Sequence record: MK250021.1
DNA: 64,000 nt
Strand: one strand, 5' to 3'
Shown here piece after piece: positions 1,187-62,417 of this stretch. The notes below the pieces were generated by a model. That model searched no databases, was not told the DNA's origin, and saw nothing but the letters and a program-made list of their open reading frames with translations. Numbering within the stretch: the stretch's first letter is position 1; every line of letters starts with the position of its first letter. A program made the position numbers and the translations under genes.

Positions 1187-1277
1187 ACACAGATGTGCGA
1201 GTGGTTGATGCAGTTGGTCTCCAAAACCAATAACGGTATATATGTACTGTTCGAGGGTTCGAATCCTTCTCTGTGTG
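1187..1277 (+). tRNA. tRNA with CCA (Trp) anticodon and a class II (Ser-like) long variable arm
   Basis: Acceptor ACACAGA/TCTGTGT, G73, anticodon arm TTGGT-CTCCAAA-ACCAA, variable stem AACGGTA/TACTGTT, T arm GAGGG-TTCGAAT-CCTTC. Confidence 0.8.
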
Positions 1278-1469
1278 CAAATTAAAAATTTATACAAATA
1301 AAATAAGAATAATATGACAAAGTTAATACGACATATACATAAGCATCGAATACAGTTATAAATTGTTGATCTTATATTATACATTATTATATATAGGATT
1401 GACATAAGAAATCATGTTCCTATATGTTTAATGATATATTGTTGTATTATATTTAGGAACACTCCATAG

Positions 1470-2473: not shown

Positions 2474-2544
2474 GGGTATTTAGCTGGAAGGCCAAGCATC
2501 TGACTGTTAATCAGAAGACGTGGGTTCGATTCCCTCAGTACCCG
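2474..2544 (+). tRNA. tRNA-Asn(GTT)
   Basis: GGGTATT/AGTACCC, TCTGA-CTGTTAA-TCAGA, T loop TTCGATT, G73. Confidence 0.85.
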
Positions 2545-2658
2545 CAAGTTAAAAACATAACATTTATATATGAAGGCTCGTACCTTTCAAATTCAGATGA
2601 TACCGTCAAGGCGGAGATATATAATGTTTCTGAATATGTTTTTGATGATTGATTAAAT

Positions 2659-5738: not shown

Positions 5739-5830
5739 CTATAACTTGATTAGTATATCTAAAATTAATTTATTAAAAAATATAAACATTTACTTATAAA
5801 TTGAATATAATATAAGAGTTTAAAAATTAC

Positions 5831-5904
5831 ACTACAGTAACTCAGTCGGTTAGAGTTCCAAGCTTATACCTTGGCGGTCGGGGGTTCAAGTCCCTCCTGT
5901 AGTA
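5831..5904 (+). tRNA. tRNA-Ile(TAT)
   Basis: ACTACAG/CTGTAGT, CCAAG-CTTATAC-CTTGG, A73. Confidence 0.88.
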
Positions 5905-6100
5905 CAAATTGTAAATGAATTAAAGTATTTGACTTATGATGAGACTTTAATTAGTAAGAAATATAAGTGTTTATGAAAGTTTATTTATGATGATGGAAGT
6001 CAATACAGCAAACATATATAATTATGATAATGTTTACTAGAAAAAGAAAACTCAAATACTTAAAAATAAATGACTTCTGATTTTTATAATTTTGGTGAAT

Positions 6101-6174
6101 GGTTCTGTAGCTCAGTTGAACAGAGCAGTGCTCTTCTAAAGCACGGGTCGTGAGTTTGATCCTCACCAGAATCA
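6101..6174 (+). tRNA. tRNA-Arg(TCT)
   Basis: GGTTCTG/CAGAATC, GTGCT-CTTCTAA-AGCAC. Confidence 0.9.
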
Positions 6175-6219
6175 CATAATGGATTAAAGATAAATATATG
6201 AAACAATTAATTTTTATAT

Positions 6220-6516
6220 ATGATTAATCCTGAAGTAATTATCAGTTAGGAAGACGTGAAAATAATTGATAGTTATAAAATAAAATCTATTAAAAACATG
6301 AAATGTGTTATTAATAGTATACGTGAAAAATGTGATAAAACTTATGTTATTCATAAAAGGAGTATGTATAGTTTAATAAATGAATGGAGATCACATAATC
6401 TTCTTTATGATTTGCATATAAAAAGGGAATAGACAAAAGATGTGGATTTAGATAATGAAACATTATTCAGAAAAATATGTTATTCAATATTATCTATATT
6501 TTATCTACATTTTTAA
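6220..6516 (+). CDS. Conserved phage hypothetical protein (98 aa; 2 TAG=Gln)
   Basis: MINPEVIIS*EDVKIIDSY...EWRSHNLLYDLHIKRE*TKDVDLD; TAG at 6247 and 6430. Confidence 0.7.
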
Positions 6517-6523
6517 TATATAA

Positions 6524-6786
6524 CGAGAGTTAGTAGTATAGCATTGTCCGGACCATTATTAAAAGTTTTAATTATTTCTTTTAGTAATGATATGCTGATT
6601 TAAATTATAAATAAATAGATTTAAAAAATAATTATGAATATAAGTAATTTAACCTTATATTTAAGAGAGACTGAAAGATTATTTTAATCTATTGATAATT
6701 AGTTTCAGGAGTTGAATATAGTTTTAATCATGATATGTAGTTCTATTAAAATAAACTTCATGATATAGGAAGTATATGTTTTCTCG
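6524..6786 (+). ncRNA. Putative multi-hairpin ncRNA of about 260 nt
   Basis: CGAGA/TCTCG closing stem; CATTATTAAAAG/CTTTTAGTAATG, AATATAAG/CTTATATT, CTGAAA/TTTCAG and ATCATGA/TCATGAT hairpins. Confidence 0.3.
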
Positions 6787-6851
6787 GTAAAGTATACGCC
6801 TGAATATTAGAATAAAAAGAATAGTGTCCGTAGATAAACTATTCAAATTTT

Positions 6852-7066
6852 GCTTCGATAGTTCAGTTGGTTAGAACGTCTGACTGTATACAGGAAACAA
6901 CCTGATTAAATTAAACTACATAATGCTGTTAGGTATCAGACTTGCGGACGCAATATTGATTTATAACTATTATAGTAATAAATTTAAATCGCTGAAAGTT
7001 TAGTTGGTTCGAATCCAATTTATGTAGCTAATCAGAAAGTCGTAGGTTCGAGTCCTACTCGAAGCG
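6852..7066 (+). tRNA. Interrupted tRNA-Asn(GTT): 5' half 6852-6887, 141-nt insert 6888-7028, 3' half 7029-7066
   Basis: GCTTCGA/TCGAAGC, G73. Joining ...TCTGACTGT to TAATCAGA rebuilds TCTGA-CTGTTAA-TCAGA, identical to the arm of tRNA-Asn at 2474. Confidence 0.8.
6916..7028 (+). ncRNA. tRNA-like element nested inside the tRNA-Asn insert
   Basis: Own acceptor CTACATA/TATGTAG, D-like CTG/CAG, T arm GTTGG-TTCGAAT-CCAAT; no canonical anticodon arm. Confidence 0.6.
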
Positions 7067-7071
7067 CAAAT

Positions 7072-7728
7072 ATGAGAGAAAAAGAATGTCGTATATGCCA
7101 TATTCATGGTAATACATTATTTTCTTTATATACATATAATAATAAAATACATTGGGTATGTAATAAATGTTAGACAGAATATGTATAGCGACGTCGAGAA
7201 CATTTAAAATTATTATCAGTTGCATATAAAGGAAATAAATGTCAATGTTGTGGATATAATAAATGTATATCTGCATTAGAATTTCACCATATAGATCCTA
7301 ATAAAAAAGAGTTTGGAATAGGATATGCAGGTTATACACATGGATGGAATGATGTTAAATTAGAATTAGATAAATGTATTTTAGTATGCGCAAATTGTCA
7401 TAGAGAAATACATGCTAATATAATAAAATGCCCAACTGAAATTATAAAAGATGAAGAAAATGTTAATATTTTATTAAATAAATTTAAATTTGATTCTATA
7501 AATAGGAATAATGATTATAAAAAATTAGTTGAAAAAATAGAACCAATTAAAAATTATACAATTCCTACAAAAGAAGAATTAATACAATTATTTAAGAAAT
7601 ATATTACATTTGAAAATATTGGTAGATTATATGGTATTACAGGAAATGCCATTAAAAAATGGTGTAAAAAATATGATTTACCATATAAATCAAAAGAATT
7701 AAAAGAATATATAAATAAATTACCATAA
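7072..7728 (+). CDS. Free-standing HNH homing endonuclease (218 aa; 2 TAG=Gln)
   Basis: CNKC*TEYV*RRREHLK...YKGNKCQCCGYNKCISALEFHHIDP...KCILVCANCHREIH; absent from the ORF track because of TAG. Confidence 0.85.
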
Positions 7729-7872
7729 ACGTCATGAGCCTTCTTAGAAAAAGGCGGTTTTAGTAACTGTACGAAGTATGTTAATACACGTGGTTAATAT
7801 ATATTTCAATAAGGGAAATTATAATGGATGTTGGCTAAGCAACTTCTTATATACGGTAATTTTTTAATATTT

Positions 7873-7976
7873 GGGAATATCTTCTCGTTGGTATGAGAAC
7901 TCTACGGTAAGTAGAGTGCATTTGCAAACCGGTTGAAATGATCTTGCTTCACAGTGTTCGAATCCTGTTGTTCCCA
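7873..7976 (+). ncRNA. Atypical tRNA-like RNA with extra arms
   Basis: GGGAATA/TGTTCCC, TTCTC/GAGAA, CTCTAC/GTAGAG, T loop TTCGAAT with bulged stem; anticodon not assignable. Confidence 0.45.
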
Positions 7977-8076
7977 CAAATATTTTGAAAATATTTTTGA
8001 TAAATATATAGACTTTACTATAAAGATTACATATAATAATTATGAATTGAAAATAATTAAGATACGCAAATTAACT

Positions 8077-8148
8077 GGTGGGTTCGTATAGCGGTTAGTA
8101 CTAGAGATTTTCATTCTCTAAACAGGAGTTCGACTCTCCTACCCACTA
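8077..8148 (+). tRNA. tRNA-Glu(TTC)
   Basis: GGTGGGT/ACCCACT, AGAGA-TTTTCAT-TCTCT. Confidence 0.9.
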
Positions 8149-8160
8149 CTAATCAATAAT

Positions 8161-9156
8161 ATGAAATAGAATTTAGAATTTTTATCAGATGACGAATTAA
8201 TATAGGAATATAGAAATTGTAATTATTCTTTAAAAGCAGTTGATAAGAAATATAATAAATCTGGAAATACTTTATTACGATTATTTAGAAAACGTAATAT
8301 AGATTATAATAAGATAAAGAATGATTATTTATTACAATAGAAACAATTTGAAGAAAGTAAAGTTTTATATTGTGAGAATTGTGGTAAAGTAATAGATGGT
8401 TATTATGGTTCTGGAAGATTTTGTAATAGATATTGTGCAACTGCATATGGCAATTCACATAGAGCAAAAAGAACAGAAGAATCAAAAAAGAAAACATCTA
8501 TTAGTGTAAAAAATTCTATTAAATGTTAGATAGCTGCTGAACGTTCAAGAAAAATATATTAGTGCAAATATTGTAATAAAGATTTTTCTGTGTTTGATAT
8601 ACGCAATATTAGAGGAAGAACATATTGTTCAAAAGAATGTAAACACAAATATTTATCTGCACATACTGGTGGTTATCGAGAAGGTTCTGGAAGAGGCAAA
8701 CAAGGATGGTATAAAGGAATTCATTGTGATAGTTCATGGGAATTAGCATTTCTTGTTTATTATAAAGATCATAATTTAAATATAGAACGTTGTAAAGAAA
8801 AAAGGTCTTATATTTGGAATAATGAAGTTCATTCATATTATCCTGATTTTATAACAGATGACGGGATAATAGAAATAAAAGGATATTCTACAGATTAGTG
8901 GAAATTAAAAGAAAACTAGAATCCGGATGTAAAAGTTTTATATAAAGATGATATAAAACCATATTTAGATTATGTAATAAATACATATGGTACTGATTTT
9001 ATTAAATTATATGATGGTTATAATCCAAAATTAGATTTGAAAAATTATACTTATGTATGGGTTCATAATGAAAAAGAGAATCATATGATTAGAACAGAAT
9101 TATATGATGAATATATAAATAATGGTTATATAAGAGGAAGAAAAACTTTTAAATAA
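8161..9156 (+). CDS. Free-standing PD-(D/E)xK (TnsA-N-like) homing endonuclease with Zn-finger repeats (331 aa; 7 TAG=Gln)
   Basis: CENCGK..GSGRFC, CKYC..YCSKEC, CDSSWELAF, YYPDF..IIEIKGY; frame open to TAA 9156 under code 15. Confidence 0.8.
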
Positions 9157-17109: not shown

Positions 17110-17793
17110 ATGAAACATTACGATTCAATAGATAATATAAAATATAATACAGAATTAGTAGGTGAACAGGTATGGGCATTTAATAAATTGGATGGACAAA
17201 ATTTTTGTGCTAAATATTCTGTAAAGAAAAAAGAATTTACAAATTTTGGTTCAAGAAAATGTATGGTAGATGAGACATCAGAACAATTTGGTGATGCTGT
17301 ACGTTATTTTAAATCACATAATTATTCATCTATATTAAGTAATATAGTTGAAAAACATAGGAGAAAGAAAGATATATTTTGTGGTGTTGATGAAATTACG
17401 TTTTTCTTCGAATGGTATGGTGATCATAGTTTTGCAGGATTTCATTCTGAAGAAGATAAAGATAATATGCATCTTGCATTAATTGATGTGTTCATCAAAA
17501 AGAAGGGATATATTGAACCAAAGATATATATGGATCTATTTAGAGATTGTGGAATAGAATTGCCGCAATTAGTTTATACGGGACCATTATCAAATGATTT
17601 TATTAAAGATATTCAAGAAAATGACTGGGCTGAACCAAATTGTAAATTTCCTTATGTAAAGGAAGGTGTTGTAATAAGGAGATCTACTATTTTAAAAGGA
17701 CAACGAATGCCTAAAGTAAAAGTTAAAACAAAATGGTGGTTAACAGAATTGCATAAGAGATATACAGAAGAAGAATGTAAATTATTAGAGTAA
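17110..17793 (+). CDS. ATP-dependent RNA ligase (Rnl2-like adenylyltransferase domain)
   Basis: Motif I KLDGQN, FFEWYG, LIDV, KEGVVIR, VKVKTKW. Confidence 0.8.
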   Translation: MKHYDSIDNIKYNTELVGEQVWAFNKLDGQNFCAKYSVKKKEFTNFGSRKCMVDETSEQFGDAVRYFKSHNYSSILSNIVEKHRRKKDIFCGVDEITFFFEWYGDHSFAGFHSEEDKDNMHLALIDVFIKKKGYIEPKIYMDLFRDCGIELPQLVYTGPLSNDFIKDIQENDWAEPNCKFPYVKEGVVIRRSTILKGQRMPKVKVKTKWWLTELHKRYTEEECKLLE

Positions 17794-34865: not shown

Positions 34866-35831
34866 TTAAATATGTTTTCTTTTTAATATTTGAATAAATT
34901 CATCTTCAGTTATTTGAGCACCTGCTGCACCTTCATGTCCTCCACCATGATAATATTCTTGAAGATATTTACCACAATGGAATTCATGTGTATCTGTAGG
35001 ATTATACAATGAAATTGCCCACATACCATCAGGTAATCTCTTAAATACAATACCGTTTTTGATTTTATCTTTACATGTTTTAAATATCTGTGAATTTGTT
35101 GGTTTCTGAATAAACAAAGCACATGCAGATCGATTATCAAATCCTACAGTCCATGTAAAATCACCATATGAATTAATGAGGTTCTTATTGTTTCTATCAA
35201 TAATCTCTGATTCTAACTTACCTAATTCTTTAAGTTTCCCTAGTTCACATGCTAATTCTTCTGGTTTTGCTTGATATATTATATAATATACATGATTAAT
35301 AATTTCACTTACATTTAAATCATATTTATTATTAACACCAATGTTTACATATCTACAAAAATCAAAATTAATATTCTCCGCATCATAACTCCAGCTATCC
35401 CATGCAGACAATACTTTAAACAAATCCGGTATTCTTCCAATAAAATTATACAAATAGCTAAAAGCATTATATAATGCAGAATGATCGATTGTCCTTAAAC
35501 CCTGAATATCGTCAAAATGTAATTCTTTTGAACTATTAATCATAGGCGCATGATGGTCAAACCAATATAGTTTATCACCAAAATGTTTTTTCAGTTTAAG
35601 CATTGTTTCTGCTGTATCAAACGAAATATCTGATATATAAACATAATCATATACACCTATAATATCATTTTGAATATTTAAGTTCTCCATCCCATTATAA
35701 TCTTCACCTAATAGTGTGATCATATTTGGATGTATTCCTTTTTCAATTACAAGAAAATTATATATGATAGCCATCGAAAATAAACCATCATTATCTTCCT
35801 TGTGATATATAATTAAATATTTGTCATCCAT
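34866..35831 (-). CDS. DHH/DHHA1 family phosphoesterase
   Basis: YHKEDNDG, FDHHAP, WDSW, GGGHEGAAG. Confidence 0.85.
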   Translation of the reverse strand: MDDKYLIIYHKEDNDGLFSMAIIYNFLVIEKGIHPNMITLLGEDYNGMENLNIQNDIIGVYDYVYISDISFDTAETMLKLKKHFGDKLYWFDHHAPMINSSKELHFDDIQGLRTIDHSALYNAFSYLYNFIGRIPDLFKVLSAWDSWSYDAENINFDFCRYVNIGVNNKYDLNVSEIINHVYYIIYQAKPEELACELGKLKELGKLESEIIDRNNKNLINSYGDFTWTVGFDNRSACALFIQKPTNSQIFKTCKDKIKNGIVFKRLPDGMWAISLYNPTDTHEFHCGKYLQEYYHGGGHEGAAGAQITEDEFIQILKRKHI

Positions 35832-39800: not shown

Positions 39801-42800
39801 TATATACTTTTCCATTAGGAAATGATATTTTATAAATTGTAAATATTTTATTCATATATTATAAATGTAAAATTATAACATATTTATATTAACTTGGCTC
39901 GGTATTACCATGCATATAGTTTCACAACTTATGTTTAGGCTTCACCGATGCATTAATATCGCTATATTAATACATTGCTTGATTAGCAATTAAGCACATA
40001 AAGGACCCAAGTTGATCCCTAAATTTCCATTTGTGAAGTTGAATTCCTTTGTTTGTATCTTATTCTTAAGTCTGCAGTTATGTGTTATATTTCCATTAGG
40101 CATTAAGAAATATGGTTCAAGATTCTTATCGCAGAGTTCTACACAATAATAATCTTTTGGTTCATCAAGATTTACAACTTCAACCTTTGTAATTTTTCTT
40201 ATAACAATGTCTTGATCTACATCTTTAAAATCATTTCTAAACATACCCATATATTGTCCATACTCAAAGATAAGTTGATCTCCTGTTTGAAGCAAATATG
40301 CTTGCTTATCTTTAATCATCTTATCATCATCAATAATAGGGAATATATGATCCGGTGTAACTCTCATTACATTTCGTGATTCATCCGGATTAAAATCGTC
40401 TGGAGCGAAATAAATTCTTACTTCTTGAACTGCTTCTGCTTTTACAAACTTAGCATTTACCCATTCACCTGTACATTTACCTGTTGTACCATTAAAATTC
40501 ATATGATATACATTAATAATTTCATCCTTATGCTTTTCATATGCATTTTTAAATGACTCAACCATATATGCGTTTGAACCTGCGTTTTCTTCCATATTAC
40601 AAGGTTCTACATACATGAATGGAGTATCACCATCGAAACAACAACTTGATAATGAATCAACTGTATCTGACATATATGTAAAGAATGAATGACCTCTTGC
40701 ATATTCATCCGCCACAAAATCTGCAGATTCCTTATCAAGGAATTCTCCATCCTTATATACTAATGCGAAACTTTCCCATTTATATTCTATATAGTTCGTT
40801 ACACTATATACGTTCATAATAATGAACTGCTTTATGTTACCATAAAGATTAGACTATATCACAATCCTATAAATATAGGATTCTCCCCATTTCCACTCAC
40901 TTGAGTGTACTTCCTTTCGGAATAGTCGTTGAACCTTATTATATAAATGAATATTTATGACCATAATATAATCTATTTGCATTTATCGATTTTACTAATC
41001 CTGATATACATGCAGTTCCTCCAATATTTTTAATAACTTCGGACATTGATGAATATATTATATTATTATCTAAACATTTTATTTTCTTTGGAAACGTTTT
41101 TCCCTTCATCGTATTACCAAATGTTTTAATAGAATATAATTCATTCTCTGATTGTGTGCACCATTCTAAATTATCTACTCTATTATCTGATCTATTACCA
41201 TTTAAATGATTTACAAATGGTTTATTTTCAGGATTTGGTATAAATTCTTGAGCAACAAGTCTATGACATAAATATCTAGTTTTAATAGAATTTTGCATTA
41301 ATGATATTCTTAAATAACCATCTAATGTATATTCTACTTTTAATGGTTTACCTTTATACGGACGTAATCCACCCCATCTACAAGGCACCATTCTATCTTT
41401 ACTTCTGAAATTACCTAAATTACTAACTTCAAATGCGCCATCATATCCTGTTATACTTTTCCAAATTTCTTCCATAATATTCTCTTATATAATCTTGGTT
41501 GCTGATTATCTAATAACTTCGCATATTTATTAGAGTTCCCAGCAGTTAAAGGAGTTTTTCAATAATAAATTACTTTATTATGCCGCAGATTGATTTACGG
41601 GGAAGGTGATTATCGTACGAAGACGTTCCTTATTAAACCATATCATGAAGTCTTTCTGTAACCATGAAACACTTTCCCAACATGGTCTTGTTCCTTCTTC
41701 ATCAGGAAATACAAATTCACCAAACATACCTTCAAAGAACGGTTTATCAAAATAAGAGAAATTTACAACATTTTTTCTTCTACATAAATCGTTACTTTAT
41801 GTACGTTACTATTTGTAACTGCTCTATGATTTCCATAGACGATTAACGAATTTCACGTTAAAAGGGTTTGTTTAAACCGTTTAGACTATATCACCAAATT
41901 TAATTTTCTTAAATTTGCACCTACACTTCCATAACACTTGTTATGTACTCTACTAACTCATTTAAAGTTTTCGATAGTCGTTGAACTTTTATCCTTGTAG
42001 GATAATTAGCTGCGTATGATTACCCAATCTTTATCGTTTTTACAATCTGATAGCCGTTATACTATCTGCTACTATCTATGTTACCATGATATGCTGTAGA
42101 TAAAGCTCTAAGGGACTTCCCGCAATTCAAGGTGTTTATTAACGTCAGCACATGTAATTTCTCTTATAATTTAATTATTACCAAAATTATGTATTTTATA
42201 CATGTGACAATTTTTACAATATGTTATAAGATTATCTATGTTATTAAGTTCTTTATTTTTTATCGCTAAATTAAATAATTCATCAAAATTATCAGTAGGA
42301 TTTAATTCTGGATGTTCTGATAATAAATTATGAAATAATATTTTAAATGGAACTATATGATGAACTTGAAGATTTTCATGACAACCGCATAGCTAACAAG
42401 TATTATGATCTCTCTCTATAACTTCTGGAACTAATCGATTAAAATATGTTCTTATTTTATTACCTAATCTTGTAGTATCTGTTGTATATGGAATATTAGT
42501 AATATTTAAACTATTTAATACTCTATTAATTACAGCTATTGTACAATTATATCTCCGTGCCAATTCTGTTTTTGATATTGACTATTCAATATATAAATTA
42601 TATAATTTTTTATAATCATTAAAATCTTCTGGTATTTCTTTTTTATGATAATTCCACATAGATTCTGCAAAAGTACGTCTTTTAATCCCATTATGTTTTA
42701 AATGACTTCTTATAGTAGTTGCTGAACAGTTAAATATTTTACCTATTTCTACTGTAGATTTACCATCATTATATAATTTTATTATTTCCTAATCATTTGT

Positions 42801-44293
42801 ATCATCATATTGTTCATAAACTTCATAATTAGTATTTTTTATATTATATTTTTTAAAATATCTATTAATAGTACCTTTATGACATTTATATATTTCTGAA
42901 ATTTCTTTCATTGTTAAACCATTATTAACATAATTTATTAAATCTTCTTTTTTAATTATTAATTTAGATTTTTCAATATTCCATTTTCTTAAATATTCTT
43001 TAATATTTGCTAATGTTGTATTTCCTTCTTTAGCACACTATTTTCGTGTTAAACCTTTAATAACATAATTTTCATATAACCAATCTCTATCTTTTGTAAA
43101 ATATCTATAATTAGACATAATTTCAGATATGTAAAATTACATACAGGATTATGTAATTTTTAATTTATTTTAGTTTATGCTGACTATAATCCTCTGGAGG
43201 CCGCAGGTTGGTTAATTGAATACACGACCTATTGAAAGAATTGTTGAATACATGAACCAATAGTTCTTGTACCATCACCTATCTTAATAGGATTCGTAAA
43301 ATCTTTTATTGAACCTTCAACATCATATTGTGATAATTCTTTCTCATATGCTTCAAGTTCTTCATCTGTTAACTCTCTTTCTGAATTATAAACAAGTTCA
43401 TCACGAAGTTTGTTTAATTCGTCTGAACCAAAATCATGTTTTCTCAATGTATCTACATCTTTACACCAATAATTAGATTCATTAAGAAGTTTCCTATATT
43501 TAGGCCCAATCTTATAAAATTCTTTACTATGCAAATGATAATCTTCACCAAACTCTTTTCTTGCAAAATAATCAAAATAAACAAGAAATTCCGATGTTGC
43601 AACTGCACCTGCAAATTGAGCAGCAACTGCAAATACAAGATTTACATACATACCACAATAAGAATCAAGATTTTGTGGATGACATGAAAGACCTCCTATT
43701 TTTTCTAAACCATTATGAAGGAATGGATACATAGTTATACTTGTGCAATACGGACTTATGGCACCAGCGAAGCTAGACTCATCGTTCTTATATATAATAT
43801 GGTTTTTTAAATCTTTTTGATATTGTTTTGCTTTAAAATTTGGATATAGTTCTTTAAGTTTCCTTGTAATCATACCTCTGCTTACAAGAATATTATCAGC
43901 TTTATGAATTTCAGCATTTAATACACCGATATTCTTAGAAGAAACATTAGAATTATCATCTACAGTACTATTTGCAGTATTAGATGCATTCTTATATCTT
44001 TCAATAAATGCTTCCTTATTAGCAACCCATTCTCTAATTTCCTTTTTCTTGTTACGATAAAGAATAAATTCTTTCGCAACTTTAGGATAATCATGAGAAT
44101 ACAAACTTGTTTCAATTTGATCCTGTATTTCCTCTACAGGAATACCATCATATGGTGTTATTGAGTTTGCAATATTAGCTATAGTATCTTTAGTATACTT
44201 AGTTTTCGTAGACTTAAACGCCTCACGAATCGCTCGTTTAACTGTCTAAACACTATAGTTCTCAAAACTACCATCACGTTTCGTTACCTTCAT
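36888..44293 (-). CDS. nrdD: Class III anaerobic ribonucleotide reductase in six exons: 44293-43177, 41768-41597, 40776-40015, 38788-38304, 37554-37216, 36970-36888
   Basis: ATP cone MKVTKRDG; junctions rebuild QSA-FVNFSYFD, TFP-VESFAL, NLG-IQTGSKSV, EDG-YWVP, RIIG-YLTK. Exons total 2958 nt = 985 aa, or 797 aa after intein removal; 3 TAG=Gln. Confidence 0.92.
36971..37215 (-). mobile_element. Group I intron 5 of nrdD (245 nt, no ORF), within the glycyl-radical motif
   Basis: 5' exon ends U, intron ends G; P ATGCTGGAA, Q AATCAGCAGG, R CTCAACGACTA, S GGTATAGTCT. Confidence 0.88.
37555..38303 (-). mobile_element. Group I intron 4 of nrdD (749 nt) with an HNH gene in its 3' part
   Basis: U/G boundaries; R CCTGAGAGACTA, S GCAATAGTCC. 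Confidence 0.85.
37590..38010 (-). pseudogene. Intron-encoded HNH endonuclease with an apparent 1-nt frameshift
   Basis: MTTKICNKCGK..CKECR (38010-37864, ends TAA); continues in another frame as NKRSQK..CIICSE..DFHHIDP..CSNCHRKIH; A5 run at the junction. Confidence 0.65.
38789..40014 (-). mobile_element. Group I intron 3 of nrdD (1226 nt) with GIY-YIG gene
   Basis: U/G boundaries; ATCGGTGAAGCC, GGTAATACCGAGCCAAG, P7 variant GAGGTCAT/ATATGACC. Confidence 0.8.
38959..39855 (-). CDS. GIY-YIG homing endonuclease (298 aa; 3 TAG=Gln)
   Basis: TIYKISFPNGKVYIG*T (YIGQT), EIYYI, NGYNSTLGG; open to TAA 38959. Confidence 0.85.
40077..40640 (-). mobile_element. Mini-intein (188 aa, no endonuclease) in NrdD
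   Basis: SLSSC|CFDGDTP ... VTPDHIFP ... YCVE..YFLMPNGNITHN|CRL. Confidence 0.9.
40777..41596 (-). mobile_element. Group I intron 2 of nrdD (820 nt)
   Basis: U/G boundaries; CTGCTGGGAA, AATCAGCAACC, GTTCAACGACTA, GATATAGTCT. Confidence 0.88.
40939..41475 (-). CDS. NUMOD4-HNH homing endonuclease in intron 2
   Basis: EEIWKSITGYDGAFEVSNLGNFRS (NUMOD4), HRLVAQEF, VNHLNGNRSDNRVDNLEW. Confidence 0.9.
   Translation of the reverse strand: MEEIWKSITGYDGAFEVSNLGNFRSKDRMVPCRWGGLRPYKGKPLKVEYTLDGYLRISLMQNSIKTRYLCHRLVAQEFIPNPENKPFVNHLNGNRSDNRVDNLEWCTQSENELYSIKTFGNTMKGKTFPKKIKCLDNNIIYSSMSEVIKNIGGTACISGLVKSINANRLYYGHKYSFI
41769..43176 (-). mobile_element. Group I intron 1 of nrdD (1408 nt)
   Basis: U/G boundaries; AATTGCGGGAA, AATCATACGCAGC, GTTCAACGACTA, GATATAGTCT. 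Confidence 0.85.
42171..43118 (-). CDS. HNH homing endonuclease with HTH repeats in intron 1 (315 aa; 4 TAG=Gln)
   Basis: RDHNTC*LCG (TCQLCG), LQVHHI, DNLITYCKNCH; absent from the ORF track. Confidence 0.8.
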
Positions 44294-44430: not shown

Positions 44431-45150
44431 TTAATTATTTTTAAAAATTTTTTCTTTCCAATAATTAAAGTCAATATCTTTGATTTGATATTGAATTAAA
44501 TTTCCAGTTAATACATCAGAAAGTTTTACAGGTTTATAATCATTTCCATCAACACCAACATCATATGTCATTGCTTTTTCTTTTAATTTCTTAGCAATAT
44601 TTGCATCTGTACCTGTATATGTTTCAACATTCTTTGGTGTATGCAGATGTCCATGTATATTGAACTTTCCTAAAAATTGACCATCACAATGTGGATAATG
44701 TGAAACTGTAAATTGAAGAATTATTTTATCTTTATAATCGTCATATATTTGTACAATAAGTTCTGTACTCCAATATACTTTACTATTCTCATTATATGGC
44801 ATCATATTCCTTCTTTGCAATACATTCTTTACATCATGATTTCCAATAATATTATAAATCTTTTCAGCATTAATATTATTAACCATTTCATCATATGTAC
44901 TTACATTACTAAATATAAAATCACCACAATTTATAAGTATTGGATTAACGCATTCAGATAAAGTTTCATTAAGATTATCAAATAAAACTTTATTCATTTC
45001 TTGTACATCTTTAAATGGTCGATTACAATATTTTATTATATTTGCATGATTTGCATGTATATCACTAGTAAAAAATATTCTATTTATATCAGATACTTTA
45101 AACTTTAATATATGCGGCCCCATTACTACTGTTTTCTTTTCTTGCTTCAT
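44431..45150 (-). CDS. Calcineurin-like metallophosphoesterase
   Basis: FTSDIH, CGDF, GNHD, SHYPH, HGHLH, DVGVD. Confidence 0.85.
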   Translation of the reverse strand: MKQEKKTVVMGPHILKFKVSDINRIFFTSDIHANHANIIKYCNRPFKDVQEMNKVLFDNLNETLSECVNPILINCGDFIFSNVSTYDEMVNNINAEKIYNIIGNHDVKNVLQRRNMMPYNENSKVYWSTELIVQIYDDYKDKIILQFTVSHYPHCDGQFLGKFNIHGHLHTPKNVETYTGTDANIAKKLKEKAMTYDVGVDGNDYKPVKLSDVLTGNLIQYQIKDIDFNYWKEKIFKNN

Positions 45151-53594: not shown

Positions 53595-54374
53595 TTAAAC
53601 TTTATCTTGACTAAATATATTATATGAAATATTAAATTCTTTCTCGTTATTTGTTATATTTTTAATAGTACCGAATTCATCTATCATAAATCCAGCTCTA
53701 CAATCCAAACATGCATATGTTTCTCTAAATATAGGTGTTTCTTGTTGTTGTGTATGTCCAAATATCTGATAATAAATATCATCTAATTTATTATCTTCAT
53801 ATTGTAATTCGCATTCATCAGCCCAAAGTATTGAACCGTATTTAGAATACCCTCCACGTGCATATCCTACATAATCAAAAACTTTTGCTAACTTTTGATT
53901 ATCATGTTTCCGTATAAGTTCATTTAAATATGTAATAGAATCATAAATATTCTTATGTTTTATTTCACCTACATATTCGTTTTTCCATTGATTACCAATA
54001 CATGAATGACTAAATGTTACCATACAATCATTTATCATTCTGTATGTAACTACTTTAAAATATTTTATATTATCAATAAACAATTTACGATATTCATCAG
54101 CATGCTCATAATCATATCGCGATCTAGATAAAAATTTCTTGCTGATATATTGTATATCATGATTTCCTAATAATAGTGTTACTTTATCAATATTTTTAGA
54201 TTTAAAATCAAGAATTTCTTTGAAATTACTTATAGCATCATCTATAGTTATTCCTTCATATCTATATGGATCCAAATAATCACCTAAGAATATAATTTCA
54301 TCACATTCTTGATTCACACATTCTTTCCAAAATGTACGTCCATGAATATCCGGTATAATTATAATTTTACTCAT
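53595..54374 (-). CDS. Metallophosphoesterase (Ser/Thr phosphatase-like)
   Basis: IPDIHGR, FLGDYLD, LGNHD, FSHS, FGHT. Confidence 0.85.
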   Translation of the reverse strand: MSKIIIIPDIHGRTFWKECVNQECDEIIFLGDYLDPYRYEGITIDDAISNFKEILDFKSKNIDKVTLLLGNHDIQYISKKFLSRSRYDYEHADEYRKLFIDNIKYFKVVTYRMINDCMVTFSHSCIGNQWKNEYVGEIKHKNIYDSITYLNELIRKHDNQKLAKVFDYVGYARGGYSKYGSILWADECELQYEDNKLDDIYYQIFGHTQQQETPIFRETYACLDCRAGFMIDEFGTIKNITNNEKEFNISYNIFSQDKV

Positions 54375-57435: not shown

Positions 57436-58947
57436 TTAATTAGTTTCATTTTCTGATGATTGTTCATCTTCAATATTAGTTATACCTGCATCTAATTCTT
57501 TTTCTTCCTTATTAACAAAACGATAGCACTTCAATTTGAATGCACGAGGTATCATATCATCTATTTTAATTACAACACCTTCATGTGGAACTTTATTATT
57601 ACATTCAGGTGATAACATTTCCATATAAAAATTCTTATCACTTGACATCTTATTCCAAAAATTTTCGTGCCAATGATTAGTTATATCAAGCTCAGGATAC
57701 AAATCTTTAGCTTTACCATAATAATATTCAATTACAGGTGTTAATTCATGTTGAATACACCATACTTGTACTTCTCGTGGTGAAAATTCATGTACATCTC
57801 CATCAACATTTGTTAAAGTAATACGATATATCATTATCTTAAAATGCTTTCCATATGTATACTCTTCACCAGACTTTAAAGGTACACATCCATAATCATA
57901 TCCCTTTTGTATATAATTATTATTTGGAAGATAACCTACAATTTCTGCATAAATCATCATTCCCTTTATCATGTGTGGCTTTAATACATTAAATGCTTCA
58001 CCCCATATATCAAAATTATAGAATCCCTTATGATATACATTACCATTTTTTTCAGATTCCTTCATTATATACTGGTTTTTTATAACAGTTCTTGATGAAT
58101 ATAAATAATCATAATCATTAAATTCATAACCTGTTAAAAATTTCGCAATTTTCTGCTTTATAGTTAATTGTTTCTTACATAAAACATAACCAACACAAAG
58201 AGAAGTACCGTGCCATTTAGAACTTATATGTATATAATCATTAGGTTGAACAACAAATGGAACCTTCTTAACAAGTGCAGTGTCGTAATGGAACCTAAAT
58301 TGTTCTGGTATAACTCTGTTAAATCTCTTTAACTTTCGTTGTCTTCTCTTATATCTAGATTGATCACCTCCAGTTTTATTTCTCTTTATAAATATCTTTG
58401 GTATAAATTTCTTTGATAACCAAAATGATTTACCATTATGTTCAATAGTATCAAACCATGTTCCATCCTTTATATCATTCTCATTAACTTCTATATTAAA
58501 ATTATCTAATATAAAATTAAGAACTACTTGTAATTCTATCAAGAAACCATCTGATACACCATTAGGTAAAAATACTTTTTCAACTTCTCCAGTAGATGGA
58601 TCAATTTTATCCATTGTTGCTCGTAGTCTAATGGACTTCACTCTACCATTATCATCAAATAACCCAGTTTTATTAGGATTACTATTCATTTCATTTTTAC
58701 GATATAAATTAGCATATCTTAAAAATTCAGGATTTATTTGTGTACTTGATGGAAAGAATACATATTTTCCTGGTTGTGAATCCTTACTTACTATAACATT
58801 ATAAATTGTATCTCCACCTATTCTACAACACTTTAACTTGTTAACTTCAGGATTAGGATGTGGAGAGAAATCCTCTTCCTTGATATAAATTACACGTGAA
58901 ACATAATTAGGGTGTAATTCACTTTCCTTCGACTTAATAAACTTCAT
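57436..58947 (-). CDS. ATP-dependent RNA ligase with N-terminal extension (Rnl2/DRB0094-like)
   Basis: SKWHGTS, YAEIVG, YRIT, PHEGVVIK, FKLKC. Confidence 0.8.
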   Translation of the reverse strand: MKFIKSKESELHPNYVSRVIYIKEEDFSPHPNPEVNKLKCCRIGGDTIYNVIVSKDSQPGKYVFFPSSTQINPEFLRYANLYRKNEMNSNPNKTGLFDDNGRVKSIRLRATMDKIDPSTGEVEKVFLPNGVSDGFLIELQVVLNFILDNFNIEVNENDIKDGTWFDTIEHNGKSFWLSKKFIPKIFIKRNKTGGDQSRYKRRQRKLKRFNRVIPEQFRFHYDTALVKKVPFVVQPNDYIHISSKWHGTSLCVGYVLCKKQLTIKQKIAKFLTGYEFNDYDYLYSSRTVIKNQYIMKESEKNGNVYHKGFYNFDIWGEAFNVLKPHMIKGMMIYAEIVGYLPNNNYIQKGYDYGCVPLKSGEEYTYGKHFKIMIYRITLTNVDGDVHEFSPREVQVWCIQHELTPVIEYYYGKAKDLYPELDITNHWHENFWNKMSSDKNFYMEMLSPECNNKVPHEGVVIKIDDMIPRAFKLKCYRFVNKEEKELDAGITNIEDEQSSENETN

Positions 58948-62330: not shown

Positions 62331-62417
62331 AATTATACAAATATAATAAAAGGATATTATCAAATAAATCAAATATTTGGTAATATCCTCATGTTATTAA
62401 AAATTAAATATTCATTA

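What the first reader, a model, noticed from the sequence alone, without database searches (positions are those of the whole stretch)
6852..7066. tRNA inside a tRNA: tRNA-Asn anticodon loop interrupted by a 141-nt insert that is itself tRNA-shaped
Seen: both halves of a well-formed tRNA-Asn flank an insert. The last 113 nt of the insert have their own acceptor stem (CTACATA/TATGTAG), D-like arm and GGTTCGAATCC T arm, and end exactly at the 3' junction. With the Asn junction the insert ends in C, and it lacks group I P7 motifs and is short, so it is not a standard self-splicing intron. Inference: tRNA-processing enzymes may cut out the inner cloverleaf, and a ligase (two RNA ligases are in this window) may join the halves. 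It could also be a decoy or shield against host anticodon nucleases. An intact tRNA-Asn exists at 2474, so the insert may simply be tolerated. tRNA introns may already be noted for Lak phages; I cannot verify whether this form is described.
Basis: partly seen in the sequence, partly recalled or inferred. Interest (0 to 1): 0.8.

Follow-up and report, generated by a model that had tools for sequence, protein, structure and literature searches.

The report
tRNA-shaped intron splitting phage tRNA-Asn
A giant gut phage's asparagine tRNA gene is split in its anticodon loop by a 141-base insert that partly folds like a tRNA; such "enigmatic" Lak-phage tRNA introns were reported in 2019, and here they prove to be a conserved, mobile family, also present in other large phages, whose way of splicing fits no known intron class.

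Summary
Window 6852-7066 is a tRNA-Asn(GTT) gene whose anticodon loop (between U35 and U36) holds a 141-nt insert (6888-7028). The window is Prevotella phage Lak-B. This exact insert was published in 2019 (Devoto et al.) as an "enigmatic" intron, there mis-typed as tRNA-Tyr(GTA).

New here: the insert belongs to a family of at least 20 distinct variants in tRNA-Asn, Thr, Gly, Phe, Pro, Tyr and Lys genes of Lak phages and four unrelated large phage contigs. All share one plan: WUA, a 3-5 bp hairpin, an A-rich linker (consensus AAAUNAAN), a tRNA "top half" (13-bp acceptor/T stack, UUCG T loop, GG loop) and a terminal C. The three helices covary.

It is not a group I or II intron, not an archaeal bulge-helix-bulge intron and not a known ribozyme.

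The 3' splice site lies exactly where RNase Z would cut. The RNase P site lies 28 nt inside the intron, so RNase P and Z alone cannot make the 5' exon end. A further cut at N|WUA is needed, then sealing, plausibly by one of the two Rnl2-family ligases in the window.

Splicing itself is inferred, not shown.

The parts
6852..6887 (+). 5' exon of tRNA-Asn(GTT): acceptor 5' strand, D arm, anticodon stem 5' strand and loop nucleotides C32 U33 G34 U35
   Evidence: uninterrupted orthologue in Lak-A2
6888..7028 (+). 141-nt intron-like insert between anticodon positions 35 and 36
   Evidence: Boundaries from the empty site in Lak-A2. Family model R1 scores it 79.3 bits, E 2e-11.
6888..6890 (+). AUA: conserved WUA at the intron 5' end; the 5' splice site lies just before it
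   Evidence: Starts AUA or UUA in every member when delimited by its empty site or outer anticodon stem
6891..6904 (+). Hairpin H1: CAGG AAACAA CCUG (4 bp, A-rich hexaloop)
   Evidence: Predicted in the MFE fold of all 8 variants folded. 4 of 4 pairs covary and 100% of cells are paired.
6905..6915 (+). A-rich linker AUUAAAUUAAA holding the conserved motif AAAUNAAN, just 5' of the inner stem
   Evidence: Motif columns invariant in the 14 Lak sequences of alignment A1. The central AAA stays invariant and the rest is 80% or more conserved in 18 sequences that include non-Lak members; L191 Lys departs (AAACACAU). It is unlike the leaders of 102 genuine Lak tRNAs.
6916..6923 (+). 5' strand of the acceptor-like stem (CUACAUAA)
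   Evidence: Pairs with 7020-7027. Covaries across types; the 8th pair is A-U here and G-C in L006.
6924..6940 (+). D-like region with the GG loop (UGCUGUUAGGUAUCAGA)
   Evidence: A GG is kept at the matching place in nearly all members, while the stem is weak and variable. Its function is inferred.
6940..6999 (+). Extended arm closed by ACUU/AAGU, in the place of an anticodon arm. It is 48 nt longer than in the 93-nt Lak-A/C version.
   Evidence: Comparison with the 93- and 129-nt variants. No other copy of the extra segment in the window or loci.
7003..7019 (+). T arm: GUUGG UUCGAAU CCAAU (first pair G-U)
   Evidence: 4 of 5 pairs covary and 100% are paired. GUUCG is invariant in the Lak members; one non-Lak member, L191 Lys, has GUCCG.
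7020..7027 (+). 3' strand of the acceptor-like stem (UUAUGUAG). Together with the T stem it makes a 13-bp stack.
   Evidence: from T loop to junction there are always 13 paired nucleotides plus 1.
7028..7028 (+). Invariant unpaired C in the discriminator position; the 3' splice site lies just after it
   Evidence: Invariant in all members
7029..7066 (+). 3' exon of tRNA-Asn: U36 A37 A38, anticodon stem 3' strand, variable loop, T arm, acceptor 3' strand and discriminator G. No CCA is encoded.
2474..2545 (+). Intact paralogue tRNA-Asn(GTT) ('Asn-1'). This gene carries the 93-nt form of the same intron in Lak-A/C.
17110..17793 (+). RNA ligase gene (Pfam RNA_ligase PF09414, the Rnl2-like family). 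Candidate sealing enzyme; its link to the intron is inferred only.
57436..58947 (-). Second RNA ligase gene (PF09414; PHROG 968 'RNA ligase'). Its link to the intron is inferred only.

Best explanation
The insert is a member of a distinct, mobile family of tRNA introns of large phages. It is most likely removed from the pre-tRNA by protein enzymes, not by self-splicing.

The intron has two modules.
- The 3' module is a tRNA 'top half': a 13-bp acceptor/T stack, a T loop, a GG loop and one unpaired C. It presents the 3' splice site to the host tRNA 3'-end endonuclease RNase Z, which cuts after the first unpaired nucleotide and leaves a 5'-phosphate on the 3' exon. RNase P may also cut at the 5' end of this module (before 6916).
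- The 5' module (WUA, hairpin H1, AAAUNAAN linker) marks the 5' splice site for a second endonucleolytic cut at N|WUA. That cut would be made by a single-strand-specific host RNase of the RNase E/G kind or by an unidentified phage protein, and would leave a 3'-OH.

The two tRNA halves stay paired through the acceptor and anticodon stems. A phage Rnl2-family ATP-dependent ligase, which needs exactly 3'-OH and 5'-phosphate ends, then seals the anticodon loop to give tRNA-Asn(GUU).

Shown: the anatomy, the family, the covariation, the mobility, and the fit of the 3' site to the RNase Z rule.
Inferred: that splicing happens at all, which enzymes act, and the chemistry of the ends.
For: - Exact boundaries come from the empty site, and the joined exons form a perfect tRNA-Asn.
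- The family has one common plan in at least 20 distinct variants from seven tRNA species. The CM score gap is >=40 bits for members against <=32 bits for noise in most searches; one member, the L214 Tyr intron, scores 32.2 and was accepted on inspection.
- Helices covary: 90% of cells are paired against 32-43% when partners are slid, 13 of 17 pairs change on both sides, and no shuffle out of 500 reaches the observed score. G-U pairs occur in the stems (window T arm; L191 Asn acceptor-like stem), which favours an RNA-level structure.
- The 3' splice site always lies 13 paired nucleotides plus one C after the T loop. The published rule for tRNase Z says that substrates with more than 11 bp in acceptor plus T stem are cut only after the discriminator, that D and anticodon arms are dispensable, and that trailers starting with C are the worst (PMC9141469). 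No family member has a 3' exon starting with C, and none has CCA after the C.
- Lak tRNA genes encode no CCA, and Lak encodes its own CCA-adding enzyme and Rnl2. So tRNA 3'-end cutting by RNase Z or an equivalent 3'-end nuclease is needed for every phage tRNA anyway.
- There are two PF09414 ligase genes in the window and one inside the intron-rich tRNA array of the unrelated phage contig L191.
- The 5' splice site is always N|W-U. U at +2 is the known preference of RNase E (my own knowledge, not tested).
- Exons of intron-bearing alleles keep the cloverleaf through compensatory changes. Between the window and L061, one D-stem pair and two anticodon-stem pairs changed on both sides with none broken, while the introns diverged in parallel (72% identity).
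Against: - There are no RNA data. No spliced molecule has been seen.
- RNase P and Z alone leave 28 nt on the 5' exon, and the enzyme for the 5' site is unknown.
- The conserved single-stranded motifs (WUA, AAAUNAAN, C) at what would be a three-way junction would suit a ribozyme core equally well.
- The linker is unlike genuine Lak tRNA leaders, which have U at -1 in 74% of cases where the introns have A. So the inner domain is not simply an ordinary pre-tRNA.
- A possible relative in L225 (tRNA-Trp, 68 nt; starts AUACAGG, ends in C) lacks the T arm altogether. If it is related, the tRNA mimic is not essential.
- Rnl2-type ligases prefer nicks in duplex RNA, whereas T4 uses Rnl1 for anticodon loops.
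- Every lineage whose array I could see in full keeps one intact tRNA-Asn(GTT). The interrupted copy might therefore be dispensable.
Confidence: 0.4

Rival explanations
1. The intron is autocatalytic: a new small self-splicing or doubly self-cleaving RNA. The outer anticodon stem, hairpin H1 and the inner acceptor-like stem form a three-way junction. Its conserved joiners (N|WUA, AAAUNAAN, C|N) make the active site, and the tRNA-like domain serves as a rigid scaffold. If it is self-cleaving, the ends would then be healed and sealed.
For: - The only near-invariant nucleotides outside the T loop are the single-stranded joiners next to both splice sites.
- Non-Lak members keep the 5' module almost letter for letter (AUACAGAGUAAACUGAAAAUCAAACU) while the inner domain is swapped freely. 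For example, the same tRNA-Tyr exons carry two different inner domains in L191 and L214.
- The terminal C is invariant although RNase Z does not need a particular discriminator.
- The window encodes metallophosphoesterases that could heal cyclic ends.
Against: - No match to any Rfam ribozyme or intron family, even at E<=10 in a 241-nt search.
- The smallest member is 79 nt, much of it a plain tRNA mimic.
- No conserved guanosine-binding or branch-point feature is evident.
- The strict retention of the tRNA elbow (T loop plus GG) and of the 13+1 geometry is more simply read as mimicry for tRNA-processing proteins.
Confidence: 0.18
2. The insert is not spliced to give a working tRNA. Either it is a selfish mobile insert that has knocked out a redundant tRNA copy, or the useful product is the insert RNA itself: a stable tRNA-like small RNA released by RNase P/Z, with the tRNA halves as a mere carrier.
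For: - Presence/absence polymorphism: L027 has both Asn genes intact. Lak-A/C carry the insert in Asn-1, and Lak-B carries it in Asn-2.
- The 93-nt insert is 100% identical in genes whose exons are only 79% identical, which suggests recent spread.
- An intact Asn(GTT) paralogue is present wherever the whole array is visible.
- tRNA-like modules as free small RNAs are known (bacterial YrlA, mascRNA).
Against: - Every member sits so that its removal restores an exact 7-nt anticodon loop, in seven different tRNA species.
- Exons of intron-bearing alleles keep all stems through compensatory changes.
- No free-standing copy outside a tRNA gene was found in the window or in about 2.5 Mb of loci.
- A dead gene would not keep the intron helices covarying unless the insert RNA itself matters. 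This argues only against the 'junk' half of this rival.
Confidence: 0.2
3. A dedicated, so far unrecognised phage-encoded splicing endonuclease binds the tRNA-like domain as a handle. It cuts both sites by measuring from it, as the eukaryotic tRNA splicing endonuclease measures from the mature domain. A phage ligase then joins the exons.
For: - Both splice sites are fixed relative to intron structures rather than to the position in the anticodon loop: 35/36 in Asn but 36/37 in Thr, Gly, Pro and Lys.
- The intron-specific conserved motifs differ from ordinary tRNA leaders.
- Most Lak genes have no known function (PMC6784885).
Against: - No candidate gene was identified.
- The family occurs in unrelated large phages, which would all need the enzyme.
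- The distance between H1 and the inner stem varies (linker 9-15 nt), which a rigid ruler would not tolerate well.
Confidence: 0.12
4. It is a degenerate group I intron, an archaeal-type bulge-helix-bulge intron, or a DNA-level miniature transposon of the IS200/IS605 (PATE) kind.
For: - Bacterial and phage tRNA introns known so far are group I.
- The insertion left no target duplication, and hairpins lie near both ends, as in IS200/IS605 elements.
Against: Group I:
- No Rfam hit.
- 79-141 nt long.
- The 5' exon ends in U, C, A or G.
- The intron ends in an invariant C instead of G.

Bulge-helix-bulge:
- No 4-bp helix links the two sites. Intron +2..+5 (UACA) cannot pair with exon A37-C40 (AAUC).
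- Candidate pairings are not conserved.

PATE:
- The tetranucleotide 5' of the insert differs in every type (CTGT, TTGT, TGAA, TTCC, TTGG).
- There are G-U pairs and strict tRNA T-loop and GG motifs.
- All copies lie on the sense strand of tRNA genes.
Confidence: 0.05
5. The main role is defensive: the split anticodon loop hides the phage pre-tRNA from host anticodon nucleases, or the inner tRNA mimic acts as a decoy for them.
For: - The window carries an RNA-repair kit (two ligases, a Thg1-like enzyme, phosphoesterases). So attack on tRNA is evidently an issue for this phage.
Against: - Nothing in the sequence tests it.
- The inner domain has no anticodon loop to act as bait.
- It does not explain the conserved 5' module.
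- It still needs a splicing mechanism to yield a usable tRNA.
Confidence: 0.05

Closest known systems
The 'enigmatic' tRNA introns of Lak megaphages (Devoto et al. 2019, Nat Microbiol, PMC6784885, Table S6)
   Same: This is the same object. The window is 100% identical to Lak-B2. The paper lists one intron per B-Lak genome, 'related but longer' than the A1/A2/C1 one, and notes that the Thr intron 'itself may encode a tRNA'.
   Different: The paper types the gene as Tyr(GTA), using the default intron position of eukaryote-mode tRNAscan. The empty site shows Asn(GTT). The paper gives no common architecture, no covariation, no mechanism and no members outside Lak.
Bacterial group I tRNA introns (cyanobacterial tRNA-Leu(UAA) and tRNA-fMet, Azoarcus tRNA-Ile)
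   Same: They sit in the anticodon loop of bacterial-type tRNA genes and are sporadically distributed and mobile.
   Different: Those are about 200-250 nt long with a P1-P9 core, a U-G pair at the 5' site, a terminal G and GTP-dependent self-splicing. All the features that could be tested fail here.
Protein-spliced tRNA introns of archaea and eukaryotes (splicing endonuclease plus RtcB or Trl1 ligase)
   Same: The likely logic is the same: endonucleolytic excision from a folded pre-tRNA, with the halves held together by the mature domain, followed by ligation.
   Different: There is no bulge-helix-bulge motif. The position is 35/36 or 36/37, not 37/38. The host is bacterial. The ligases at hand are ATP-dependent Rnl2-type enzymes that use 3'-OH and 5'-phosphate ends, not cyclic-phosphate chemistry.
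tRNA-like elements used as RNase P/RNase Z processing signals (mitochondrial 'tRNA punctuation', MALAT1 mascRNA, MHV68 tRNA-miRNA transcripts)
   Same: A tRNA-shaped module inside a longer transcript dictates where the tRNA end-processing enzymes cut. The 3' junction here falls exactly at the RNase Z position.
   Different: None of those lies inside another tRNA, and none requires the flanks to be rejoined.
Phage T4 anticodon-loop repair (PrrC break healed by Pnkp and sealed by Rnl1)
   Same: A phage-encoded RNA ligase seals a break in a tRNA anticodon loop while the tRNA body holds the ends together.
   Different: T4 repairs damage inflicted by the host. Here the break would be a programmed step of maturation, and the ligases are of the Rnl2 family.
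tRNA-like domains of tmRNA and of bacterial/phage Y-RNA-like YrlA
   Same: An acceptor stem, T arm and reduced D loop, with another helix in place of the anticodon arm.
   Different: Those are free-standing RNAs with a CCA or Ro-binding function. The stack here is 13 bp, and the module is embedded in an intron.

Membership tests
Lak-phage tRNA introns (Devoto 2019) / the intron family defined here (model R1) | Lies in the anticodon loop of a phage tRNA gene, and its removal restores a 7-nt loop | tested here: met
Lak-phage tRNA introns (Devoto 2019) / the intron family defined here (model R1) | Sequence identity to the published intron | tested here: met
   Identical in Lak-B2/B4/B7/B8. 96.7% identical to the A1/A2/C1 intron over the part of the query they share, in two aligned pieces. 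Published sequence.
Lak-phage tRNA introns (Devoto 2019) / the intron family defined here (model R1) | Common plan: WUA, hairpin, AAAUNAAN linker, 13-bp acceptor/T stack, terminal C | tested here: met
   79.3 bits, full-length match to R1; segments located
Group I intron | Conserved catalytic core (P3-P9), detectable with Rfam RF00028 | tested here: not met
   No hit at E<=1 in 16 kb or at E<=10 in 241 nt
Group I intron | 5' exon ends in U, paired to G of the guide sequence | tested here: not met
   The family's 5' exons end in U, C, A or G
Group I intron | Terminal guanosine at the intron 3' end | tested here: not met
   Invariant C
Archaeal/eukaryotic endonuclease-spliced tRNA intron | Bulge-helix-bulge: both sites in 3-nt bulges separated by a 4-bp helix | tested here: not met
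   By inspection and the folds. The two sites flank different helices, and the required pairing (UACA with AAUC) is absent.
Archaeal/eukaryotic endonuclease-spliced tRNA intron | EndA-type endonuclease available in phage or host | not tested
   Only 64 kb of a 550-kb genome was read. None is listed in the functional table of Devoto 2019.
Genuine tRNA (for the inner 113 nt) | Reaches the Rfam tRNA gathering score (29 bits) | tested here: not met
   No hit over 6916-7028 at E<=10. By contrast, the inner domains of the Thr intron (30.4 bits) and of the L214 Tyr intron (34 bits) pass.
Genuine tRNA (for the inner 113 nt) | 5-bp anticodon stem with a 7-nt loop; 7+5 = 12-bp acceptor/T stack | tested here: not met
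   A 60-nt arm replaces the anticodon arm, and the stack is 8+5 = 13 bp
Genuine tRNA (for the inner 113 nt) | T loop UUCRANY and a GG loop able to form the elbow | tested here: met
   UUCGAAU at 7008-7014 and UAGGU at 6929-6933
RNase Z substrate (works-like, not a family) | More than 11 bp in acceptor plus T stem, then an unpaired nucleotide, no CCA, and a trailer that does not start with C | tested here: met
   13 bp, then C, then UAAUC
RNase Z substrate (works-like, not a family) | Actual cleavage after C7028 | not testable with these tools
   Needs an enzyme assay or RNA end mapping
Known self-cleaving ribozymes (hammerhead, twister, twister-sister, pistol, hatchet, HDV-like, hairpin) | Match to the Rfam model | tested here: not met
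   The hammerhead core CUGANGA is not kept: CUGAUUA here and CUGAAAA in non-Lak members.
IS200/IS605-type miniature element (PATE) | A constant target tetranucleotide 5' of the insertion | tested here: not met
   CTGT, TTGT, TGAA, TTCC, TTGG
IS200/IS605-type miniature element (PATE) | A Y1 transposase (TnpA) in the genome | not tested
   The whole genome was not screened

The most novel reading that the evidence does not exclude
These inserts are a new class of tRNA intron, confined so far to large phages, that is spliced by a route unknown in bacteria. One possibility is that the host's own tRNA end-processing enzymes are tricked by a built-in tRNA mimic, and a phage RNA ligase re-seals the anticodon loop. 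That would be the first protein-dependent tRNA splicing pathway in the bacterial world. The other possibility is a new small ribozyme built around a tRNA scaffold. The 3'-terminal tRNA 'top half' could also serve the element's spread, for example CCA addition and copying from the 3' end. This would fit its precise jumps between paralogous tRNA genes.
Probability: 0.55. Interest if true: 0.85.

Novelty: already known. Interest (0 to 1): 0.6.

Why it matters
All bacterial and phage tRNA introns characterised so far are self-splicing group I RNAs. Protein-dependent tRNA splicing is considered a trait of archaea and eukaryotes.

A conserved, mobile intron family that fails every group I, group II and bulge-helix-bulge test would open a new chapter in RNA processing. 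This family carries a tRNA mimic that places its 3' splice site at the RNase Z position. It would also make the 2019 puzzle of the 'enigmatic' Lak introns directly testable, because defined motifs can now be mutated.

Practical consequences:
- Gene finders mis-type these genes. This one is called Tyr in the literature and Ser by ARAGORN, but it is Asn. That distorts the tRNA and codon-usage inventories of huge phages.
- The family model allows a census of these introns.
- A natural cassette that is cut out by tRNA-processing enzymes and re-sealed could be useful for RNA engineering.

Tried and rejected
- Group I/II introns and known ribozymes: no Rfam match at permissive thresholds, and the terminal nucleotides are wrong.
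- Bulge-helix-bulge: the required pairing is absent. An alternative 7-bp pairing of exon CUGU plus AUA with the 3' strand UAUGUAG exists in the Lak Asn type only. It is absent from Gly, Thr and the L191 Asn intron, so I dropped it.
- The linker as an ordinary tRNA 5' leader: none of 102 genuine Lak tRNAs has AAAUNAAN, and they have U at -1. Rejected.
- The HNH endonuclease gene just downstream (7072-7728) as the intron's homing enzyme: the gene is present next to intact Asn-2 in Lak-A and L027, and absent next to interrupted Asn-2 in L057 and L061. No correlation.
- Free-standing copies outside tRNA genes: none in the window or in about 2.5 Mb of fetched loci.
- The 48-nt extra segment of the Lak-B form as a nested mobile element: no other copy anywhere.
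- An intron-less allele with exactly the window's exons: no exact match in IMG/VR.
- Bacterial genomes: 120 pattern hits in GTDB species representatives. My structural scanner read all 120 and the family model read 88 of them; both found only ordinary tRNAs.
- My first joining of the exons was off by one base and gave 'Tyr'. I corrected it. This shows how the published mis-typing arises.
- Searches for a later paper explaining these introns found none.
Full report
WHAT IS THERE. Window 6852-7066 (+) holds the two halves of a class I tRNA around a 141-nt insert. The 5' half (6852-6887) ends ...UCUGA-CUGU. The 3' half (7029-7066) begins UAA-UCAGA and ends with discriminator G, with no encoded CCA. 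Joined at these points, the halves give a textbook 75-nt tRNA-Asn(GTT) in ARAGORN. Without its intron option ARAGORN misses the gene. With that option it reports 'tRNA-Ser(GCT)' with a 141-nt intron, because it places the junction one base to the left. The window contains no N.

ORIGIN AND EXACT BOUNDARIES. Window 6000-9000 is 100% identical to Prevotella phage Lak-B2, B4, B7 and B8, and 99.8-99.9% identical to the other B-Lak genomes. Lak-A2 has the orthologous gene, between tRNA-Arg(TCT) and tRNA-Glu(TTC), uninterrupted (L001:2243-2317, loop CTGTTAA). Comparing the filled and empty sites leaves only one solution. The insert is ATACAGG...TATGTAGC (6888-7028), it lies between U35 and U36, and there is no duplicated target. 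The short variable loop, G73 and the intact orthologue settle the identity as Asn.

PRIOR DESCRIPTION. Devoto et al. [quoted passage not shown] They count one intron per B-Lak genome, 'in tRNA Tyr (GTA)', which is 'related but longer' than the A1/A2/C1 one. They note that the tRNA-Thr(TGT) intron 'itself may encode a tRNA'. They found no Rfam class and call the introns enigmatic. The Tyr assignment comes from eukaryote-mode tRNAscan, which puts introns at 37/38. I found no later paper that explains them. So the existence of this feature, and the 'tRNA in a tRNA' idea for one relative, are already published. Its identity, architecture, spread and mechanism are not.

A FAMILY WITH ONE PLAN. I started from the Lak-A2 tRNA-Thr gene (L001:3474-3660). 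From it, the published Table S6 and pattern, structure and covariance-model searches, I collected at least 20 distinct variants.
- In Lak-like phages they interrupt Asn (93, 129 and 141 nt), Thr (114), Gly (84, 87), Phe (79, 86) and Pro (91).
- They also occur in four non-Lak large phage contigs:
  - L191 (235 kb): Asn, Tyr, Thr and Lys.
  - L214 (150 kb): Phe and Tyr.
  - L245 (303 kb): Phe.
  - L225 (194 kb): Tyr.

All read, 5' to 3':
- WUA;
- a 3-5 bp hairpin (H1) with an A-rich loop of 6-7 nt;
- an A-rich linker ending in AAAUNAAN in all but the most divergent member (L191 Lys, AAACACAU);
- a closing stem of 7-9 bp that usually starts CU;
- a hairpin or loop that in nearly all members contains GG;
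- sometimes a further arm;
- a T arm of 4-6 bp with a UUCG-type 7-nt loop;
- the 3' strand of the closing stem;
- one C.

The T stem plus the closing stem always add up to 13 bp (8+5, 7+6 or 9+4). The last 26 columns of the alignment have no gap.

Independent MFE folds recover H1 and the closing stem in all 8 variants folded. A covariance model built from 14 Lak sequences scores members at 40-90 bits and everything else at 32 bits or less, except that the divergent L214 Tyr intron itself scores only 32.2 bits and was accepted on inspection. The model finds exactly one member in the window.

On the model-fitted alignment, 90% of cells are paired, against 32-43% when partners are slid. 13 of 17 pairs change on both sides, and no shuffle in 500 reaches the observed covariation. 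The alignment leans towards the structure, as the tool warns. G-U pairs in the stems (window T arm; L191 Asn closing stem CUCAGCAA/UUGUUGGG) speak for RNA rather than DNA structure.

The inner domain of the window's member is only a partial tRNA. Rfam's tRNA model does not see it, while the inner domains of the Thr intron (30.4 bits) and of the L214 Tyr intron (34 bits) pass the threshold. What is conserved is the tRNA 'top half' and elbow, not a cloverleaf.

SPLICE SITES FOLLOW THE INTRON, NOT THE LOOP. The 5' junction is always 3 nt upstream of H1 (N|WUA). The 3' junction is always one C after the 13-bp stack. In the anticodon loop this falls at 35/36 in Asn, but at 36/37 in Thr, Gly, Pro, Lys and Lak Phe. 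So the sites are specified by two separate intron modules.

MOBILITY.
- The 93-nt Asn intron sits in the 'Asn-1' gene in Lak-A/C (L004/L005:4501-4593; the orthologue of the intact window gene 2474-2545).
- It sits in the 'Asn-2' locus in L057/L058/L060.
- The 129- and 141-nt forms sit in Asn-2.
- L027, a 553-kb Lak-like contig, has both Asn genes intact.
- The 93-nt intron is 100% identical between genes whose exons are 79% identical.
- In L057 the exon parts next to the intron look Asn-1-like, while the acceptor and T stems look Asn-2-like. This is what co-conversion during DNA-level homing would produce (inference).
- The Thr, Phe, Gly and Pro introns are likewise present or absent among close relatives.

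The HNH endonuclease gene 5 nt downstream (7072-7728, with two in-frame TAG codons; only its stop-free piece 7189-7725 was searched) does not correlate with the intron.

IS THE INTERRUPTED GENE STILL A GENE? The window and L061 both carry the intron in Asn-2. Their introns have diverged to 72% identity and their exons to 85%. The exon differences in stems are all compensatory: D stem U-A to C-G, and anticodon stem U-A to A-U and U-A to G-C. That argues for continued selection on the cloverleaf while interrupted, and hence for splicing. The evidence is modest, and every fully visible lineage also keeps an intact Asn(GTT) copy.

WHAT IT IS NOT.
- Not a group I intron. There is no core and no Rfam hit. 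It is 79-141 nt long. The 5' exons end in U, C, A or G, and the terminal nucleotide is C rather than G.
- Not a group II intron.
- Not a bulge-helix-bulge intron. No 4-bp helix links the sites.
- Not a known self-cleaving ribozyme.
- Not an IS200/IS605-like element. The target tetranucleotide is not constant, and copies occur only on the sense strand of tRNA genes.

HOW IT MOST LIKELY WORKS. The following points are shown.
- The 3' site has the geometry of an RNase Z site. The published rule for tRNase Z has three parts (PMC9141469): substrates with more than 11 bp in acceptor plus T stem are cut only after the discriminator; D and anticodon arms are dispensable; and trailers beginning with C are the worst substrates. 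All members have 13 bp plus one unpaired C, none has CCA after it, and no 3' exon starts with C.
- Lak tRNA genes lack CCA. Lak encodes a CCA-adding enzyme and Rnl2 but no RNase P or Z. Host RNase Z, or an equivalent 3'-end nuclease, must therefore act on every phage tRNA.
- The window encodes two PF09414 (Rnl2-family) ligases, a Thg1-like enzyme, two metallophosphoesterases and a DHH phosphoesterase. The unrelated contig L191 has a PF09414 ligase inside its intron-rich tRNA array.

The following steps are inferred.
- RNase Z cuts after C7028, leaving a 5'-phosphate on the 3' exon.
- RNase P may cut before C6916.
- A further endonuclease cuts at U35|A6888. The constant W at +1 and U at +2 fit the RNase E preference (my own knowledge), but a dedicated phage protein is equally possible.
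- The halves, held together by the acceptor and anticodon stems, are sealed by an Rnl2-type ligase, which needs exactly 3'-OH and 5'-phosphate ends.

The RNase P site is 28 nt inside the intron, and those 28 nt are a conserved module of their own.

Three observations count against the protein route. The conserved single-stranded joiners at a three-way junction would suit a ribozyme. The linker is unlike real Lak tRNA leaders. A possible relative in L225 tRNA-Trp (68 nt; starts AUACAGG, ends in C) has no T arm.

My estimates are as follows.

| Explanation | Probability |
|---|---|
| Host tRNA-processing enzymes plus phage ligase | 0.40 |
| Dedicated phage endonuclease | 0.12 |
| New ribozyme | 0.18 |
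| Not spliced, or the insert RNA is the product | 0.20 |
| Other known classes | 0.05 |
| Defensive role as the main function | 0.05 |

NOVELTY AND VALUE. The feature at these coordinates is already in the literature, so I file it as already known. It remains mechanistically unassigned.
- the correct isotype;
- the modular consensus with covariation;
- the 13+1 rule and its fit to RNase Z;
- the invariant WUA, AAAUNAAN (near-invariant outside Lak) and C;
- evidence of precise jumps between paralogous genes;
- members in four non-Lak large phages.

If splicing is confirmed, it must proceed by a route not known in bacteria.

LIMITS. There are no RNA data. Only 64 kb of the genome was read. E-values of the home-made model are rough.

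Noticed in passing
window 7072-7728 (+): An HNH endonuclease gene starts 5 nt after the interrupted tRNA. It has two in-frame TAG codons (7171-7173, 7186-7188), in keeping with the TAG recoding (code 15) that the 2019 paper reports for Lak. Its relatives in IMG/VR almost all lie inside phage tRNA arrays: 2-27 tRNAs in each of the 30 loci (L027-L056) that were scanned.
   Followed up: partly
window 1187-1278 (+): tRNA-Trp(CCA) of 92 nt with an 8-bp long variable arm, a class II shape that is unusual for tRNA-Trp. tRNA-Trp genes of 91-92 nt also occur in the other Lak-like loci, but only the window copy was folded.
   Followed up: no
window 17110-17793 (+), 57436-58947 (-), 61518-62372 (-), 53595-54374 (-), 44431-45150 (-), 34866-35831 (-): An RNA repair and maturation set: two Rnl2-family RNA ligases, a Thg1-like 3'-5' nucleotidyltransferase, two calcineurin-type phosphoesterases and a DHH/DHHA1 phosphoesterase.
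   Followed up: partly
L225 3389-3528 (reverse strand): tRNA-Trp(CCA) with a 68-nt insert that starts AUACAGG (the same start and hairpin as the family) and ends in C. It has no T arm and no closing stem. It may be a relative without the tRNA mimic.
   Followed up: partly
L011 about 5800-5920 (reverse strand) and the neighbouring tRNA-Met; L225 5243-5366 and 6063-6183 (reverse strand): Another recurring kind of insert in phage tRNAs. After the D arm (GAGCACGUAA) comes a 5-7 bp hairpin, then CAAAC/ACAAAA-rich sequence. It is not matched by the family model and was not analysed.
   Followed up: no
L057 2100-2264 (also L058, L060): The tRNA-Asn at the Asn-2 locus has mosaic exons. Its D arm, anticodon stem and intron are like Lak-A Asn-1. 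Its acceptor and T stems are like Asn-2. This looks like a co-conversion tract from intron homing.
   Followed up: partly
L214 823-2076 (+); L191 6844-7515 (+) and 4096-4689 (+): A reverse transcriptase gene lies about 2 kb upstream of an intron-bearing tRNA in L214. In L191, an RNA ligase (PF09414, 95 bits) and an HNH endonuclease lie inside the array that holds four intron-bearing tRNAs.
   Followed up: no
L191 2965-3048 versus L214 5518-5632: The same tRNA-Tyr exons and the same 5' intron module carry two quite different inner domains: a minimal top half in one, and a full class II-like cloverleaf that passes the Rfam tRNA threshold in the other. The modules seem to be exchangeable.
   Followed up: partly
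L225 8977-9405 (reverse strand): A GOLLD-like RNA match (77.8 bits, below the gathering score of 150) lies among the tRNA genes.
   Followed up: no
window 39990-40817 (-), 40939-41475 (-), 43229-44104 (-): An intein splicing-domain fragment, an HNH/NUMOD4 endonuclease and an anaerobic ribonucleotide reductase (NrdD) fragment lie close together, which suggests an nrdD gene invaded by mobile elements.
   Followed up: no
window 6852-7066: Gene finders mis-type this gene: Ser(GCT) from ARAGORN's intron mode and Tyr(GTA) from eukaryote-mode tRNAscan in the literature. The 141-nt form is also missed by the Rfam tRNA model.
   Followed up: yes
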